A stretch of 64,000 nucleotides of DNA from Adineta vaga (Eukaryota > Animalia > Rotifera): the NCBI GenBank assembly GCA_021613535.1, contig CP075495.1:3968001-4032000 (forward strand), written 5' to 3'. The translations under genes were made by a program, and so were the position numbers. Below the pieces are notes generated by a model. The model made no database searches. It saw only the letters and a program-made list of their open reading frames with translations, and was not told where the DNA came from. The first letter of the stretch is position 1; the number at the start of each line of letters is the position of its first letter. Positions 51,432-54,538 of the stretch are shown one piece after another.

Positions 51432-53120
51432 ATGGCTTCATCAACATATGATATACTTGGTCAAAAGTTATTTGATGGTACAACAAAACGAATTTATTCA
51501 ATGATTGATCAACCAGGTCTTATTTGTATCTATCGAAAAGATAATTATCGTTCATCTGGAAAAACATTCTGTATACCCGGTAGCCGTCGATCAAGTGTTG
51601 ATAGTTCAATTCGTTTTAATCAACAACAACTTCAAAGTCTTCATAATAATCCGAATCTATTAGATGAAATACCTGGTAAAGGTGCATTAACAACATCCAT
51701 TACAACTTGTGTATATGAAATCTTACGTGAAACATCAATTCCAACATTTTATGTTGCACCACATCCACAACCAGATATGTTTATTGCACGAAAATGTACA
51801 ATGATTCCTATTCTATGGATTGTACGACGTTTAGCAAATGAAACATATGTAAAACGTAATCCCGGAATTGCAAATGGTCATCGATTTGTTCCACCGATTG
51901 TTGAAATTTATCACAAACGTCATCCTGTTGTTTATCGACGTTTAACTATTGGAAATCTTGATGAACATCTCGAATCTTCACGTGAAAGTTTAGTTGATGA
52001 TTCGGATTCGGATTCGGATGAATGTTTTTCATGTATATGGTCCTATGAACAACTTCTTAATGCACATTTTGATATTGAAAATTTGAAAATAAGTCAAACT
52101 GAAATCGAATATATGTATGAAACATGTTGTACAATTTTCGATATTCTCGAACATATATGGATGGTTAAAAAGAATTGTCAATTAATTGATTTAAAAATTG
52201 AATTTGGTATAACAACAACCATGCCAAAAGAAATTGTTGTTGCAAATACATTTGATACAGAAACATGGCATATTCTACGACCAATGGAAAAAACATTATC
52301 AACAGGTTTAGATTTAATTCAAGAAAACCTTATTTGGATTAATACAGCTTTACGAGATATCTTAGATCTAAATAATAAAATTTCATTACCATCAAAACTT
52401 GATCCACGACGACGAAGTTTTGCACAACAAAAGCAATTATCAACTTTAGACGATGTTGACACCGATGAAGAAGATCCTTCAGTTAATAGTATTATTCCCG
52501 AAAATGATCATATCAATGCTCATAGAGATATGTTATCAAATATGTATAAATCATCATTTTCGGCATCAATGACAAGTCGTTGTATTGTTGTTTGTTCATC
52601 ATCGATCGATATTGAACATGCACAAAAAATTAAAATCACATTGAATGAAATCTATAATGTCCAATGTGATATTCGTCTTTGTTCAATCTATAAATCAACA
52701 AAAAGTGTTTTGAAATTTCTATCTAATTATGTTTATGAACATTGTCGACCAACAATATTTATTACACTGGGAAATATAAATAATGGTTTAGCAATGTGTT
52801 TATCATCGAATTCTCCTTATCCAGTTATTCATTGTTCATTAATGAATATTGATCAACAAAATAATCTTTTTGATATCAATTCATATTTATCATCGGATAC
52901 ATCAATGTTTACTGTTGTTTTTACATTATCAAGTGCAATACAAAATGTGATACAAATTCTATCTATAAACGATTGGAGATTATGGACAAAACAGCGTGGA
53001 AAACGTTTGAAAAATTATCTGGATCTATTAATTGCTGATCAACAACTAACAACAATAAGTTCAACAGCAATATCACAACAAACAAATAAAACAAATAGTG
53101 GTATTTTAACAAATAAATAA
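51432..53120 (+). CDS. Divergent PAICS/ADE2-like (SAICAR synthetase + AIR carboxylase) protein, probably catalytically inactive; intronless
   Basis: Collinear with animal PAICS: LGQKLFDGTTK, GKGAL, CTMIPI.WIVRR, KRNPG, F.PP.VE, WSYEQLL, IF.ILE..W, LIDLKIEFG, then the AIRc domain (NGLA...N.PYPVI). Key residues are substituted. Confidence 0.85.
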   Translation: MASSTYDILGQKLFDGTTKRIYSMIDQPGLICIYRKDNYRSSGKTFCIPGSRRSSVDSSIRFNQQQLQSLHNNPNLLDEIPGKGALTTSITTCVYEILRETSIPTFYVAPHPQPDMFIARKCTMIPILWIVRRLANETYVKRNPGIANGHRFVPPIVEIYHKRHPVVYRRLTIGNLDEHLESSRESLVDDSDSDSDECFSCIWSYEQLLNAHFDIENLKISQTEIEYMYETCCTIFDILEHIWMVKKNCQLIDLKIEFGITTTMPKEIVVANTFDTETWHILRPMEKTLSTGLDLIQENLIWINTALRDILDLNNKISLPSKLDPRRRSFAQQKQLSTLDDVDTDEEDPSVNSIIPENDHINAHRDMLSNMYKSSFSASMTSRCIVVCSSSIDIEHAQKIKITLNEIYNVQCDIRLCSIYKSTKSVLKFLSNYVYEHCRPTIFITLGNINNGLAMCLSSNSPYPVIHCSLMNIDQQNNLFDINSYLSSDTSMFTVVFTLSSAIQNVIQILSINDWRLWTKQRGKRLKNYLDLLIADQQLTTISSTAISQQTNKTNSGILTNK

Positions 53121-53392
53121 ACAAGAATTTTTTTCTTTTGTCTTATTCTAAACTATATATTTTTGTTGTTGTTGCTGTATTCTAATTTCTTATCATCTAT
53201 ATTTTGTTATCCAATATCAAAGTGAGAGAGAGAGAGAGAGAAAAAAAGTAAAAGATTCTTCGTCAAGATGACAATATATTTTCATTCTTTAGTTAGTGAT
53301 AAAGCATTTTCGAATCTTGATAAAGTCACGATAATTGAAACAGTATCTCTTCTTCGTTCTTTTCAAGTTTATTTCATCATCGACAAGACAAA

Positions 53393-54538
53393 ATGCATAT
53401 CATCTTGTCTCTTGCGGTACTGTCTATTCTTGGTAATGGTGTATATATGCATATATGTATGTGGGCACCAATTCAACGTGGTCAATTTGATATATCCGTA
53501 CCAGGAGCTCATCCATGTTATCGTAAAATAGGACCATGTGGTAATATAAATGCCTCATCATCTTCTCCACGAACATCATTAGTAGCAGGAAGCAAATATA
53601 AAGTTGAATTTCAACAAAATTTGAATCACTATTATACAGGCAAACCTGGTGCACTCGATATTACATTTGCTGTTGGTCTTAATCCATCGGAAAATGATTT
53701 TCGTGTACTTCATTCATTTTCCGATTATAATGCTATGAATCAAATAACACAAACAAATTTTTCCATTGAAATTGATTTACCCAATCAAGCATGTGATGAA
53801 TGTGTTTTACGTGTACGTTATTTATCAAATAATCCCGAAGAAGATGATCATGGAACTGTTTTTCATCAATGTTCAGATATAAAATTAACTCAATCATCTT
53901 TAAATGTATTAAAGCAACAAGAAGAAAAAGAAGAAAAAATTGAAAAAGAACTTATTCAACATCAAGAAGATCCGCATGATTGTTGTGCACCAGAAAGTTA
54001 TCTCAATGGATTTTTTCATGTTATTCCTGCGATTGATTATCGTGCGGAAGGTTTAATTTTTTATGATCAAAAAGCCAAACAAATGCGCGTCATTGTGACA
54101 ACTAACGGTGGTCGTGGTAATACAACATTCGATGGAACATTTGATATGTGGATGAATTTTACATCTGGCCGTCAATATTATTATAATCGTAATACTGGCG
54201 CATGTGATCTTTATGGATTAGATTATTGGAATGATTGGTGTTTCGGTAATAAATATAATCAAACTGAAGATTTTGTTGCTGCTGATGTTCAATGTACATC
54301 TCCATATGGGCCAAGTCGTCATTGTCATCAATGGCGTAATGGAGAATTTCTTTTTGAAACCCTTGCTACATCTGATTGTTTACCATCCAGTATTTCTCGA
54401 CCAAGTGGTGAACGAATTGACTACATTAAAGGATCCATTGGACCAATACCACCATCAACATTCGTGCCCAATCCCGTTTGTGTTAAACAAAAAAAAGTTA
54501 AACATGCATCAAAGCGATGGATGAAAATGCATTTCTAA
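53393..54538 (+). CDS. Secreted fusion of an N-terminal histidine-brace (LPMO/X325-like) copper domain and a C-terminal ependymin-related domain; intronless
   Basis: Signal peptide then H-I-C-M..P.QRG, PCG, QNLNHY..PG, LP...CDECVLRVRY, FHQCSDI. A charged linker follows, then CCAP...IFYDQKAKQMRV...GRQYYY...C...CLP...GPIPPSTFVPNPVC (ependymin pattern). Confidence 0.72.
   Translation: MHIILSLAVLSILGNGVYMHICMWAPIQRGQFDISVPGAHPCYRKIGPCGNINASSSSPRTSLVAGSKYKVEFQQNLNHYYTGKPGALDITFAVGLNPSENDFRVLHSFSDYNAMNQITQTNFSIEIDLPNQACDECVLRVRYLSNNPEEDDHGTVFHQCSDIKLTQSSLNVLKQQEEKEEKIEKELIQHQEDPHDCCAPESYLNGFFHVIPAIDYRAEGLIFYDQKAKQMRVIVTTNGGRGNTTFDGTFDMWMNFTSGRQYYYNRNTGACDLYGLDYWNDWCFGNKYNQTEDFVAADVQCTSPYGPSRHCHQWRNGEFLFETLATSDCLPSSISRPSGERIDYIKGSIGPIPPSTFVPNPVCVKQKKVKHASKRWMKMHF

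What the first reader, a model, noticed from the sequence alone, without database searches (positions are those of the whole stretch)
53393..54538. Histidine-brace (LPMO-like) copper domain fused to an ependymin-like domain in an animal
Seen: after a 19-aa hydrophobic leader the protein starts with His (codon ~53450; HICMWAPIQRG). It has a second His in QNLNHY (~53627) and ends the domain with FHQCSDI. A charged linker and an ependymin-type Cys/aromatic pattern follow (CCAP...YD...R...Y.Y...C...CLP...F.P.P.C). Established: N-terminal His1, a second His and a terminal FYQCxD(I/V) strand characterise LPMO and X325-like copper proteins, and ependymin-related proteins have a LolA-like lipid-binding fold. 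Inference: an undescribed secreted or lysosomal Cu-redox plus lipid-binding fusion, perhaps oxidising microbial cell-wall or glycolipid substrates. It is intronless among intron-rich neighbours, so it is also an HGT candidate. Caveat: Met at the -1 cleavage position is atypical.
Basis: partly seen in the sequence, partly recalled or inferred. Interest (0 to 1): 0.8.

Follow-up and report, generated by a model that had tools for sequence, protein, structure and literature searches.

The report
Copper LPMO-like domain fused to ependymin domain
A bdelloid rotifer gene encodes a secreted protein that joins a copper "histidine-brace" domain of the polysaccharide-oxidase (LPMO) type to an ependymin-type lipid-pocket domain; the pairing is real, conserved, shared with many predatory protists and not described in the papers I could search, but what it oxidises or carries is untested.

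Summary
Window 53393-54538 (+) is one uninterrupted 381-aa ORF with a signal peptide, His20, an N-domain, a charged linker and a C-domain.

- **N-terminal His:** in 89 complete homologs the conserved His follows a normal signal peptide, with A/G/S/C at -1 in 84.
- **C-domain:** a profile matches human EPDR1 end to end (E 1.6e-8). Foldseek agrees (E 1e-7), and it has the six-Cys EPDR pattern.
- **Selection:** both domains are under purifying selection (dN/dS 0.06 and 0.09 against Adineta ricciae), and synteny is conserved.
- **Distribution:** the fusion is not rotifer-specific. About 42 of 146 cluster representatives carry it, including Paraphysomonas, Entosiphon and Paramoeba. No non-bdelloid animal with the fusion was found, so ancient HGT is plausible but unproven.

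Copper binding, redox activity and the ligand are untested. No paper in the searched library describes this architecture. Verdict: a new variant of a known kind.

The parts
53393..53449 (+). Signal peptide, aa 1-19 (MHIILSLAVLSILGNGVYM)
   Evidence: Read directly from the sequence. In 89 complete homologs the conserved His follows a hydrophobic leader directly. Residue -1 is A 49, G 22, S 8, C 5, M 4, T 1, and -3 is V/A/S/C/T/I/G/L. No SignalP was available. An alternative cut after Gly16 cannot be excluded for this ortholog.
53450..53902 (+). LPMO-like histidine-brace (copper) domain, aa 20-170. It contains His20 (53450-53452), Asn78-His79 (53624-53629), invariant Asp111, Tyr143 and Glu150, and the strand Phe157-His-Gln-Cys160-Ser-Asp162-Ile (53861-53881).
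   Evidence: - AF2 model: pLDDT 96.5, pTM 0.90.
- Foldseek: AA10 5ftz E 6.8e-6.
- hhalign against the rotifer AA15-like profile: 96.7%, E 3.3e-10, aligning N-H with N-H and F-x-x-C-x-D-I with F-x-x-C-A-D-I.
- Pfam BIM1-like 26.0 bits against a cut-off of 27, and LPMO_10 16.5 bits.
- NCBIfam SCE4755 37.3 bits.
- dN/dS 0.06.
53903..53965 (+). Charged Glu/Lys/Gln-rich linker, aa 171-191
   Evidence: pLDDT is below 50 in the full-length model. Length and sequence vary among homologs. dN/dS is 0.37, against below 0.1 in the two domains.
53966..54508 (+). Ependymin-related (EPDR/LolA-like) domain, aa 192-372, with Cys197-Cys198, Cys271, Cys283, Cys329, Cys363 and a conserved N-F-T sequon
   Evidence: - Profile of 20 C-domains against PDB: human EPDR1 6e7o E 1.6e-8 over the whole domain.
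- Foldseek: EPDR1 6jld E 1.3e-7, TMt 0.64, followed by VioE and LolA.
- Pfam Ependymin hits in 6 of 19 homologs, best E 5.4e-7.
- The Cys spacing fits EPDR 'profile 2' of PMC6280359.
- dN/dS 0.09.
54509..54538 (+). Short basic C-terminal tail (aa 373-381, ...SKRWMKMHF) and the stop codon. It has no hydrophobic GPI-type signal.
   Evidence: Read directly from the sequence. Homologs end in basic, His-containing tails of variable sequence.

Best explanation
**Shown.** This is an intact gene of a bdelloid rotifer (Adineta, most likely A. vaga) under purifying selection. It encodes a two-domain protein for the secretory pathway: a signal peptide, an LPMO-fold domain whose first mature residue is the conserved His, a flexible charged linker, and an ependymin-related (LolA-like) domain.

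**Inferred.** After signal-peptide cleavage, His20 (amino group and side chain) and His79 would form a copper histidine brace, with Phe157 below the metal and the invariant Glu150 nearby.

LPMOs are built as an N-terminal catalytic domain, a linker and a substrate-targeting module. This N-domain family carries interchangeable C-terminal modules: EPDR, an unknown domain of about 350 aa, and PA14 once. I therefore read the protein as a modular extracellular or digestive copper oxidase. In this reading the EPDR pocket replaces a carbohydrate-binding module and holds a hydrophobic or lipid-linked part of the substrate, such as a glycolipid, lipoglycan or envelope component of ingested microbes. 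The copper site would then oxidise it with O2 or H2O2.

**Confidence by step.**
- Architecture and secretion: about 0.9.
- A copper histidine brace: about 0.75.
- The oxidase-with-lipid-targeting mechanism: about 0.4.
For: - **Intact ORF with conserved synteny.** The gene sits between metazoan-type genes (PAICS-like upstream, GOST_TM downstream) in both the window and A. ricciae.
- **Purifying selection.** dN/dS is 0.10 overall, 0.06 for the N-domain and 0.09 for the C-domain.
- **N-terminal His.** The His lies directly after the signal peptide in 89 of 89 complete homologs, with a canonical -1/-3 pattern in 84.
- **Brace residues.** Profile-profile alignment places Asn78-His79 on the A-N-H brace motif and Phe157 on the axial position of the rotifer's own AA15-like genes.
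- **Invariant residues.** H1, H60, E131, F138 and C141 are invariant across 97 sequences.
- **EPDR domain.** Supported by profile, fold and Cys pattern.
- **Interchangeable C-terminal modules.** The same N-domain carries EPDR in about 42 representatives, an unknown domain of about 350 aa in about 55, and PA14 in one.
- **Phagotrophic named hosts.** Paraphysomonas, Entosiphon, Paramoeba, Naegleria, Arcella and choanoflagellates.
Against: - No metal, activity or ligand data exist.
- I could not read model coordinates. The His20-His79 distance and the position of Glu150/Asp111 relative to the metal are therefore unmeasured.
- By Pfam the domain scores better against the non-catalytic BIM1/X325 family than against LPMO_10: 26 against 16.5 bits for this protein, and 38.9 against 26.2 for the paralog.
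- The domain is small (about 150 aa), like X325.
- Met at -1 is unusual, and a cut after Gly16 is possible for this ortholog.
- No expression data could be obtained for this gene.
- EPDR ligands are themselves poorly defined.
Confidence: 0.45

Rival explanations
1. Bim1/X325-like copper handling rather than catalysis. The histidine brace, closed by a carboxylate (Glu150 or Asp111) as a fourth ligand, binds Cu(II) tightly and passes it to importers or to other proteins. The EPDR domain docks the protein on membranes or lipids. The role would be copper acquisition or buffering in the gut lumen or in phagosomes.
For: - Pfam BIM1-like_dom is the best Pfam match. It hits 17 of 19 close homologs, and the paralog scores 38.9 bits, over the cut-off.
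- The domain size matches X325.
- Invariant acidic residues lie in loops before the last strand. X325/Bim1 use an Asp on a flexible loop as a fourth ligand (PMC7529816; PMC10952591).
Against: - The tail is basic, so there is no GPI signal, whereas Bim1 is described as GPI-anchored (PMC10952591; sequence).
- The N-terminal H-x5-P-x2-R motif, the N-H second-His motif and the F-x-x-C-x-D-I strand align with AA10/AA15 enzymes.
- Swapping of C-terminal modules is typical of enzymes with targeting domains.
- Whether a carboxylate touches the metal could not be tested.
Confidence: 0.3
2. A non-metal binding protein. The LPMO fold is kept only as a binding or scaffold domain, lectin-like or chitin-binding-like, and the protein acts as a carrier or adhesin for lipids and glycans.
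For: Fold similarity alone does not show metal chemistry. Foldseek also lists Der p 2-type lipid-binding sandwiches at E about 5e-4. EPDR proteins have carrier-like roles, for example the sponge carotenoprotein 8i34.
Against: The residues needed for a brace are exactly the invariant ones: His at +1 after the signal peptide, the second His and the axial Phe, across 97 diverse sequences and under dN/dS 0.06. That pattern is hard to explain without the metal site.
Confidence: 0.1
3. On origin rather than function: the gene was inherited vertically from an early eukaryotic ancestor and lost in nearly all other animals, instead of being acquired by horizontal transfer into the bdelloid stem lineage.
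For: - The N-domain occurs in choanoflagellates (Salpingoeca) and a sponge (Geodia barretti). Atlas labels also place clusters in molluscs.
- EPDR domains are widespread in animals (PMC6280359).
- The gene's base composition matches the host.
- The immediate upstream host-type gene is intronless too.
Against: - Three word-based searches that return source names found no animal other than bdelloids with the fusion.
- Bdelloids form one clade (SH-aLRT 98). That clade sits inside a further clade (98) with the unnamed P0223 (GC3 33%) and with P0043 and P0067. P0067 comes from a genome with 87% GC3, unlike any rotifer locus measured here.
- Scan notes report fungal LPMO transfers elsewhere in the same genome. 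These are unchecked leads.
Confidence: 0.35

Closest known systems
AA15 / AA10 lytic polysaccharide monooxygenases (Pfam LPMO_10, PF03067), e.g. Thermobia domestica TdAA15A (5msz) and Streptomyces lividans AA10 (5ftz)
   Same: - Secreted, with an N-terminal His after the signal peptide.
- The second His lies in an x-N/P-H motif after the first long strand.
- The axial aromatic residue lies in the F/Y-x-x-C-x-D-I final strand.
- The H-x5-P-x2-R start (motif spacing from my own knowledge of AA10/AA15; partial alignment).
- The modular layout of catalytic domain, linker and C-terminal module.
   Different: - About 150 aa instead of 170-200, with a short L2 region held by its own Cys pairs.
- A five-residue insertion after the second His.
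- Below the PF03067 cut-off (16.5 against 23 bits).
- The C-terminal module is an EPDR/LolA-like lipid-pocket domain instead of a carbohydrate-binding module.
- No activity is known.
X325 / Bim1 LPMO-like copper proteins (Pfam BIM1-like_dom, PF20238; LaX325, 6ibh/6ibi)
- The best Pfam match: this protein scores 26.0 against the 27-bit cut-off, and the paralog passes at 38.9 bits.
- UniProt already auto-labels a bdelloid paralog and a sponge homolog as 'BIM1-like domain-containing'.
   Different: - X325 is described from fungi, with an Asp as fourth copper ligand (PMC10952591, PMC7529816); Bim1 is described as GPI-anchored (PMC10952591).
- Here there is no GPI signal, a different taxonomic range, and an EPDR domain attached.
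- The Asp-ligand feature could not be tested.
Ependymin-related proteins (EPDR1/MERP; Pfam PF00811; 6e7o, 6jld)
   Same: - The whole C-domain aligns to EPDR1 (E 1.6e-8).
- The LolA-like fold (TM 0.64-0.66).
- The six-Cys 'profile 2' pattern, including the CC doublet.
- An N-glycosylation sequon and routing through the secretory pathway.
   Different: - Known EPDRs are stand-alone proteins of about 213 aa with their own signal peptide (PMC6280359). Here the domain is the C-terminal half of a fusion.
- This protein itself gets no Pfam Ependymin hit at E<=1.
- It carries an extra Cys pair (Cys301/Cys312) shared only with its nearest relatives.
Bacterial SCE4755 family polysaccharide monooxygenase-like proteins (NCBIfam NF043005)
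   Same: The best single-family E-value for the N-domain (2.5e-9, 37.3 bits, aligned over 120 residues), with structural neighbours at TM 0.77.
   Different: The score is far below the family cut-off of 75 bits. The family is bacterial and stand-alone or differently built, and it is uncharacterised itself.

Membership tests
LPMO superfamily (AA10/AA15 type, PF03067) | His is the first residue of the mature protein (signal peptide cleaved directly before it) | tested here: met
   In 89 complete homologs the conserved His follows the leader, with A/G/S/C at -1 in 84. This ortholog has Met at -1. No SignalP run or protein data exist, so for this one protein the feature is inferred from the family.
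LPMO superfamily (AA10/AA15 type, PF03067) | A second, internal His at the brace position | tested here: met
   hhalign of the 97-sequence N-domain profile against the rotifer AA15-like profile gave 96.7% and E 3.3e-10. N78-H79 aligns with the A-N-H motif. His is invariant in 97 sequences.
LPMO superfamily (AA10/AA15 type, PF03067) | Axial Phe/Tyr in the last strand (F/Y-x-x-C/A-x-D-I/V) | tested here: met
   F157-H-Q-C-S-D-I aligns with Y184-R-N-C-A-D-I of TdAA15A and with F-Y-N-C-S-D-I of AsLPMO10B. F and C are invariant.
LPMO superfamily (AA10/AA15 type, PF03067) | LPMO immunoglobulin-like beta-sandwich fold | tested here: met
LPMO superfamily (AA10/AA15 type, PF03067) | Score over the Pfam gathering cut-off (23 bits) | tested here: not met
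   This protein scores 16.5 bits, E 0.014. The paralog on C5 scores 26.2 bits.
LPMO superfamily (AA10/AA15 type, PF03067) | The two His side chains and the amino terminus are close enough to bind one copper, and the protein has oxidative activity | not testable with these tools
   Model coordinates are not exposed, and copper is not an available ligand. EPR and activity assays are needed.
X325 / BIM1-like (PF20238) | Score over the Pfam gathering cut-off (27 bits) | tested here: not met
   This protein scores 26.0 bits, E 1.4e-5, which is narrowly below. The paralog scores 38.9 bits. 17 of 19 homologs match at E<0.01.
X325 / BIM1-like (PF20238) | A carboxylate (Asp on a Gly-rich loop) as the fourth equatorial copper ligand | not testable with these tools
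   Invariant Asp111 and Glu150 are candidates, but their distance to the site cannot be read. The feature is as described in PMC7529816 and PMC10952591.
X325 / BIM1-like (PF20238) | C-terminal GPI-anchor signal | tested here: not met
   The C-terminus is ...KHASKRWMKMHF, which is basic and has no hydrophobic tail. This was judged by inspection only; no GPI predictor was run.
Ependymin-related proteins (PF00811) | Sequence similarity over the whole EPDR domain | tested here: met
   The profile of 20 C-domains against EPDR1 6e7o gave E 1.6e-8, positions 3-179 against 3-190. This protein alone gets no Pfam hit at E<=1, and homologs reach at best E 5.4e-7 and stay below the 32.3-bit cut-off where bits are listed (P0065, 24.4).
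Ependymin-related proteins (PF00811) | Conserved Cys pattern (profile 2: CC, C, C, C, C) | tested here: met
   C197-C198, C271, C283, C329 and C363 are conserved in the alignments. The spacing matches positions 23/24, 94, 107, 148 and 186 of PMC6280359.
Ependymin-related proteins (PF00811) | LolA-like half-barrel fold with a hydrophobic pocket | tested here: met
   Foldseek on the full-length model gave EPDR1 at E 1.3e-7 and TMt 0.64-0.66, followed by VioE and LolA. C-domain pLDDT is mostly 70-90. Pocket content and ligand were not tested.

The most novel reading that the evidence does not exclude
The family is a new class of LPMO-type copper oxidases. Its targeting module is a lipid pocket rather than a carbohydrate-binding module, so the enzyme would act on lipid-anchored or amphipathic substrates of prey cell envelopes, such as glycolipids, lipopolysaccharide, lipoglycans, or lipids themselves. 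That chemistry is unknown for histidine-brace enzymes. It would also give the first mechanistic clue to what ependymin-type domains bind. Bdelloids would have taken the gene from a phagotrophic protist.
Probability: 0.2. Interest if true: 0.85.

Novelty: new variant of a known kind. Interest (0 to 1): 0.62.

Why it matters
Both halves belong to families whose biology is still open. LPMO-like histidine-brace proteins outside fungi and bacteria are barely explored, and their substrates keep widening. Ependymin-related proteins still lack a defined molecular function despite solved structures.

A conserved, selected fusion of the two is a 'Rosetta stone' link. It is found in dozens of lineages of phagotrophic eukaryotes and in bdelloid rotifers. 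It predicts that a copper site and a lipid pocket work on one substrate or in one pathway, and that can be tested directly with recombinant protein.

The finding also adds a eukaryote-derived candidate to the list of possible foreign genes in bdelloids. Finally, it defines a large N-domain family (558 cluster representatives) that current Pfam models catch only at the threshold.

Tried and rejected
- **Brace geometry.** I replaced it with a profile-profile alignment to AA15-like genes.
- **Sequence-only searches of the PDB.** The whole protein, the paralog N-domain and the sponge homolog gave only chance hits: haemagglutinin, TcdA and ScdA, all at E>0.2. N-domain profiles reached only AA10/AA15 last strands at E 0.004-0.27. 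LaX325 was never reached by sequence, so the position of the X325 Asp ligand could not be mapped.
- **The X325 paper.** The Labourel et al. paper is not held in the library.
- **ESM Atlas.** A search by features with the whole protein gave nothing usable.
- **Contamination or pseudogene.** Rejected on synteny with A. ricciae among metazoan-type genes, host-like base composition, the intact frame and dN/dS 0.10.
- **A rotifer-made fusion of its own EPDR and AA15 genes.** Rejected, because protists carry the same fusion and the rotifer's canonical EPDR and LPMO_10 genes are separate loci.
- **The other C-terminal module.** The domain of about 350 aa in the Naegleria type has no Pfam or PDB sequence match.
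- **Nearest non-rotifer relatives.** Their contigs are too short to name the organisms.
- **Bacterial promoter and terminator scan.** It is irrelevant to a eukaryotic gene and gave nothing above shuffles.
Full report
**The sequence.** Window 53393..54538 (+) is one uninterrupted ORF of 381 aa.
- a 19-residue hydrophobic leader;
- His20 (HICMWAPIQRG);
- QNLNH79Y;
- F157-HQCSDI;
- a Glu/Lys-rich linker;
- CCAP, followed by a Cys/aromatic-rich second half.

**Host and copies.**
- The genome is 100.8 Mb in six contigs, and the window is C2:3,968,001-4,032,000.
- Orthologs of 67-84% identity are named from Adineta ricciae, A. steineri, several Rotaria, Philodina roseola and Didymodactylos. The host is therefore a bdelloid rotifer of the genus Adineta. 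A. vaga is my inference from the assembly shape, and an earlier scan note says the same.
- A second intact, intronless copy of 52% identity lies on C5.

**Is the gene real and in use?**
- In A. ricciae the ortholog sits in the same order: PAICS-like gene, this gene, then a GOST_TM gene on the other strand. Peptidase_M14, COMM and His_Phos genes lie around them. It is therefore a resident rotifer gene and not contamination.
- Against that ortholog, dN/dS is 0.10 overall: 0.06 in the N-domain, 0.09 in the C-domain and 0.37 in the linker.
- GC3 is 15%, against 12% for the neighbouring gene.

**The N-terminal His.**
- I aligned 97 diverse N-domains and looked at what precedes the conserved His in the 89 that start with Met.
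- In all of them the His follows a typical leader at about residue 20.
- Residue -1 is Ala 49, Gly 22, Ser 8, Cys 5, Met 4 and Thr 1. Residue -3 is a small or aliphatic residue.
- The Met at -1 is a peculiarity of a few Adineta and Rotaria orthologs. Philodina has Ser, and the paralogs have Gly.
- For this one protein a cut after Gly16 cannot be excluded without SignalP or protein data. However, the brace residues stay under strong constraint in these species.

**The N-domain fold.**
- The first full-length model was mediocre (pLDDT 69).
- With the 97-sequence alignment the mature N-domain folds at pLDDT 96.5 and pTM 0.90.
- Foldseek finds only LPMOs at the top: AA10 5ftz at E 6.8e-6, then CBP21, AA15, AA11, AA9, fusolin and LaX325.
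- These top scores are within about one unit of each other, so the fold does not decide between an AA15/AA10-type enzyme and an X325-type binder.

**The N-domain by sequence.**
- Pfam puts this protein just under the BIM1-like cut-off (26.0 against 27 bits) and under LPMO_10 (16.5 against 23).
- The paralog passes both, at 38.9 and 26.2 bits.
- NCBIfam's bacterial SCE4755 'polysaccharide monooxygenase-like' family gives E 2.5e-9, far below its own cut-off.
- To test the second His, I built a small profile from the rotifer's own canonical LPMO_10 (AA15-like) genes and compared profiles.
  - The result was 96.7% probability, E 3.3e-10.
  - N78-H79 lies on their A-N-H motif.
  - A five-residue insertion follows it.
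  - F157-x-x-C-S-D-I lies on F-Y-N-C-A-D-I.
- HMMER alignments to TdAA15A put F157 on Tyr184, C160 on Cys187 and D162 on Asp189.
- That His91 and Tyr184 are the TdAA15A site residues is my own knowledge of that structure.
- Invariant in all 97 sequences are H1, C3, P7, R10, C23, C30, N59, H60, G67, D92, Y124, E131, F138 and C141, in mature numbering.
- I could not measure the His-His distance, because the coordinates are not exposed.

**The C-domain.**
- A profile of 20 C-domains matches human EPDR1 over its whole length (E 1.6e-8), and also mouse and frog EPDR1.
- Foldseek with the full-length model lists EPDR1 first (E 1.3e-7, TMt 0.64-0.66), then the sponge EPD carotenoprotein, VioE and LolA.
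- Six of 19 homologs get a Pfam Ependymin hit.
- The six conserved Cys, including the CC doublet, match 'profile 2' of the EPDR survey (PMC6280359).
- That survey describes EPDRs as stand-alone proteins of about 213 aa. It mentions neither rotifers nor fusions.

**How widespread is it?**
- An exhaustive profile search with the N-domain found 558 cluster representatives at E<=1e-3 and 113 at E<=1e-30. In nearly all, the domain begins at residue 15-40.
- Among the 146 new representatives listed:
  - about 42 also carry the EPDR-like domain;
  - about 55 are proteins of 430-573 aa with a different, unknown C-terminal domain;
  - the rest are short;
  - one has PA14.
- Named carriers of the EPDR fusion are:
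  - Paraphysomonas, a chrysophyte;
  - Entosiphon sulcatum, a euglenid;
  - Paramoeba aestuarina;
  - a Chloroparvula transcriptome.
- The other architecture occurs in Naegleria, Arcella and two Salpingoeca choanoflagellates.
- Stand-alone N-domains occur in Physarum and the sponge Geodia barretti. Atlas clusters are labelled mostly Mollusca, and I treat those labels as leads only.
- The fusion genes on longer metagenome contigs sit among eukaryote-type genes.
- No animal other than bdelloids carries the fusion in any search that returns names.

**Origin.**
- A maximum-likelihood tree of 95 full-length fusion proteins was built with the quick method (SH-aLRT only, midpoint root).
- All bdelloid sequences fall in one clade (98) that splits into the ortholog and paralog groups.
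- That clade sits inside a larger clade (98) with the unnamed sequences P0223, P0043 and P0067, and then among other protist and environmental sequences.
- P0067 comes from a contig with 87% GC3, so it is not a rotifer.
- This fits one acquisition before the bdelloid radiation, followed by a duplication. I put horizontal transfer at about 0.65.
- The neighbours are unnamed and the root is arbitrary. The N-domain exists in choanoflagellates and some animals, so vertical descent with many losses is not excluded.
- Intron absence is weak support. The upstream PAICS-like gene is a single exon too, while the downstream GOST_TM gene is split.

**Mechanism.**
- Shown: a secreted two-domain protein with an LPMO fold, the three sequence hallmarks of a histidine brace, and an EPDR/LolA-like domain, all under selection.
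- Inferred: copper binding.
- More speculative: the choice between an enzyme and a copper carrier.
- I lean to a modular oxidase in which the EPDR pocket acts as the targeting module, for four reasons.
  - The layout is that of modular LPMOs.
  - The C-terminal module is interchangeable across the family.
  - The key motifs align with AA10/AA15 enzymes.
  - There is no GPI signal.
- The Bim1-like reading remains strong, because Pfam prefers that family, the domain is small, and invariant carboxylates could close the copper site as in X325 (PMC7529816, PMC10952591).

**Literature.** Full-text searches for X325 with ependymin, bdelloid with LPMO, BIM1-like or LPMO-like with ependymin or LolA-like, LPMO with Naegleria, rotifer or chrysophyte, and SCE4755, DUF6595 or PF20238 found no description of this architecture or of this protist and rotifer family. 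UniProt's automatic 'BIM1-like domain-containing protein' label on a paralog and on the sponge protein is the only prior annotation seen.

**Verdict.** The domain interpretation is supported, while function and HGT remain open. This is a new variant of known kinds: an LPMO-like copper domain fused to an EPDR domain. It is of real interest to LPMO and ependymin specialists, but it is neither unique to this animal nor yet tied to a chemistry.

Noticed in passing
P0051, P0049 (Naegleria), P0232 (Arcella), P0231 and P0140 (Salpingoeca), P0048; about 55 of 146 representatives: The same histidine-brace N-domain is fused in many protists to a different C-terminal domain of about 350 aa. That domain has no Pfam match and no PDB sequence match. 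It is a second undescribed architecture of the family.
   Followed up: partly
G000:C5:4584849-4585868 (L002 ORF 1300..2565, true start near 1462): An intact, intronless paralog of 52% identity lies on another chromosome. It passes the Pfam cut-offs for both BIM1-like_dom (38.9 bits) and LPMO_10 (26.2 bits). The two paralog lineages are present across bdelloid genera.
   Followed up: partly
window 51432-53120 (+): The upstream neighbour is a 562-aa single-exon ORF. Its A. ricciae ortholog carries SAICAR_synt and a weak AIRC hit, so it is PAICS-like. It is also intronless, which weakens intron absence as an HGT signal here.
   Followed up: partly
G000:C6:9277711-9285746, C4:8919492-8919935, C3:7208894-7209064: The genome also has canonical, intron-containing stand-alone ependymin genes, including a tandem group on C6. 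There are also about eight LPMO_10 (AA15-like) loci on C1, C2, C4 and C6. The AA15-like genes have Phe in the axial position and an A-N-H second-His motif.
   Followed up: partly
window 54509-54535 and the C-termini in alignment A1: Most family members end in a short basic tail with one to three His (bdelloids: VKHAS..W M..H). This might be a second metal-binding or sorting element. It was not tested.
   Followed up: no
P0102 (461 aa): In one representative the N-domain lies at residues 319-460, not at the N-terminus. This may be a merged gene model, or a case where the His cannot be N-terminal.
   Followed up: no
window 53222-53245: A (GA)n microsatellite followed by an A-run lies about 150 bp upstream of the start codon, in the short intergenic spacer.
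   Followed up: no
aa 301 and 312 of the window protein; P0223, P0043: Bdelloids and their nearest unnamed relatives share an insertion with an extra Cys pair in the EPDR domain (C-x10-C before Q-W-x-N-G). The other protist fusions lack it, so it marks the clade that includes the possible donor.
   Followed up: no
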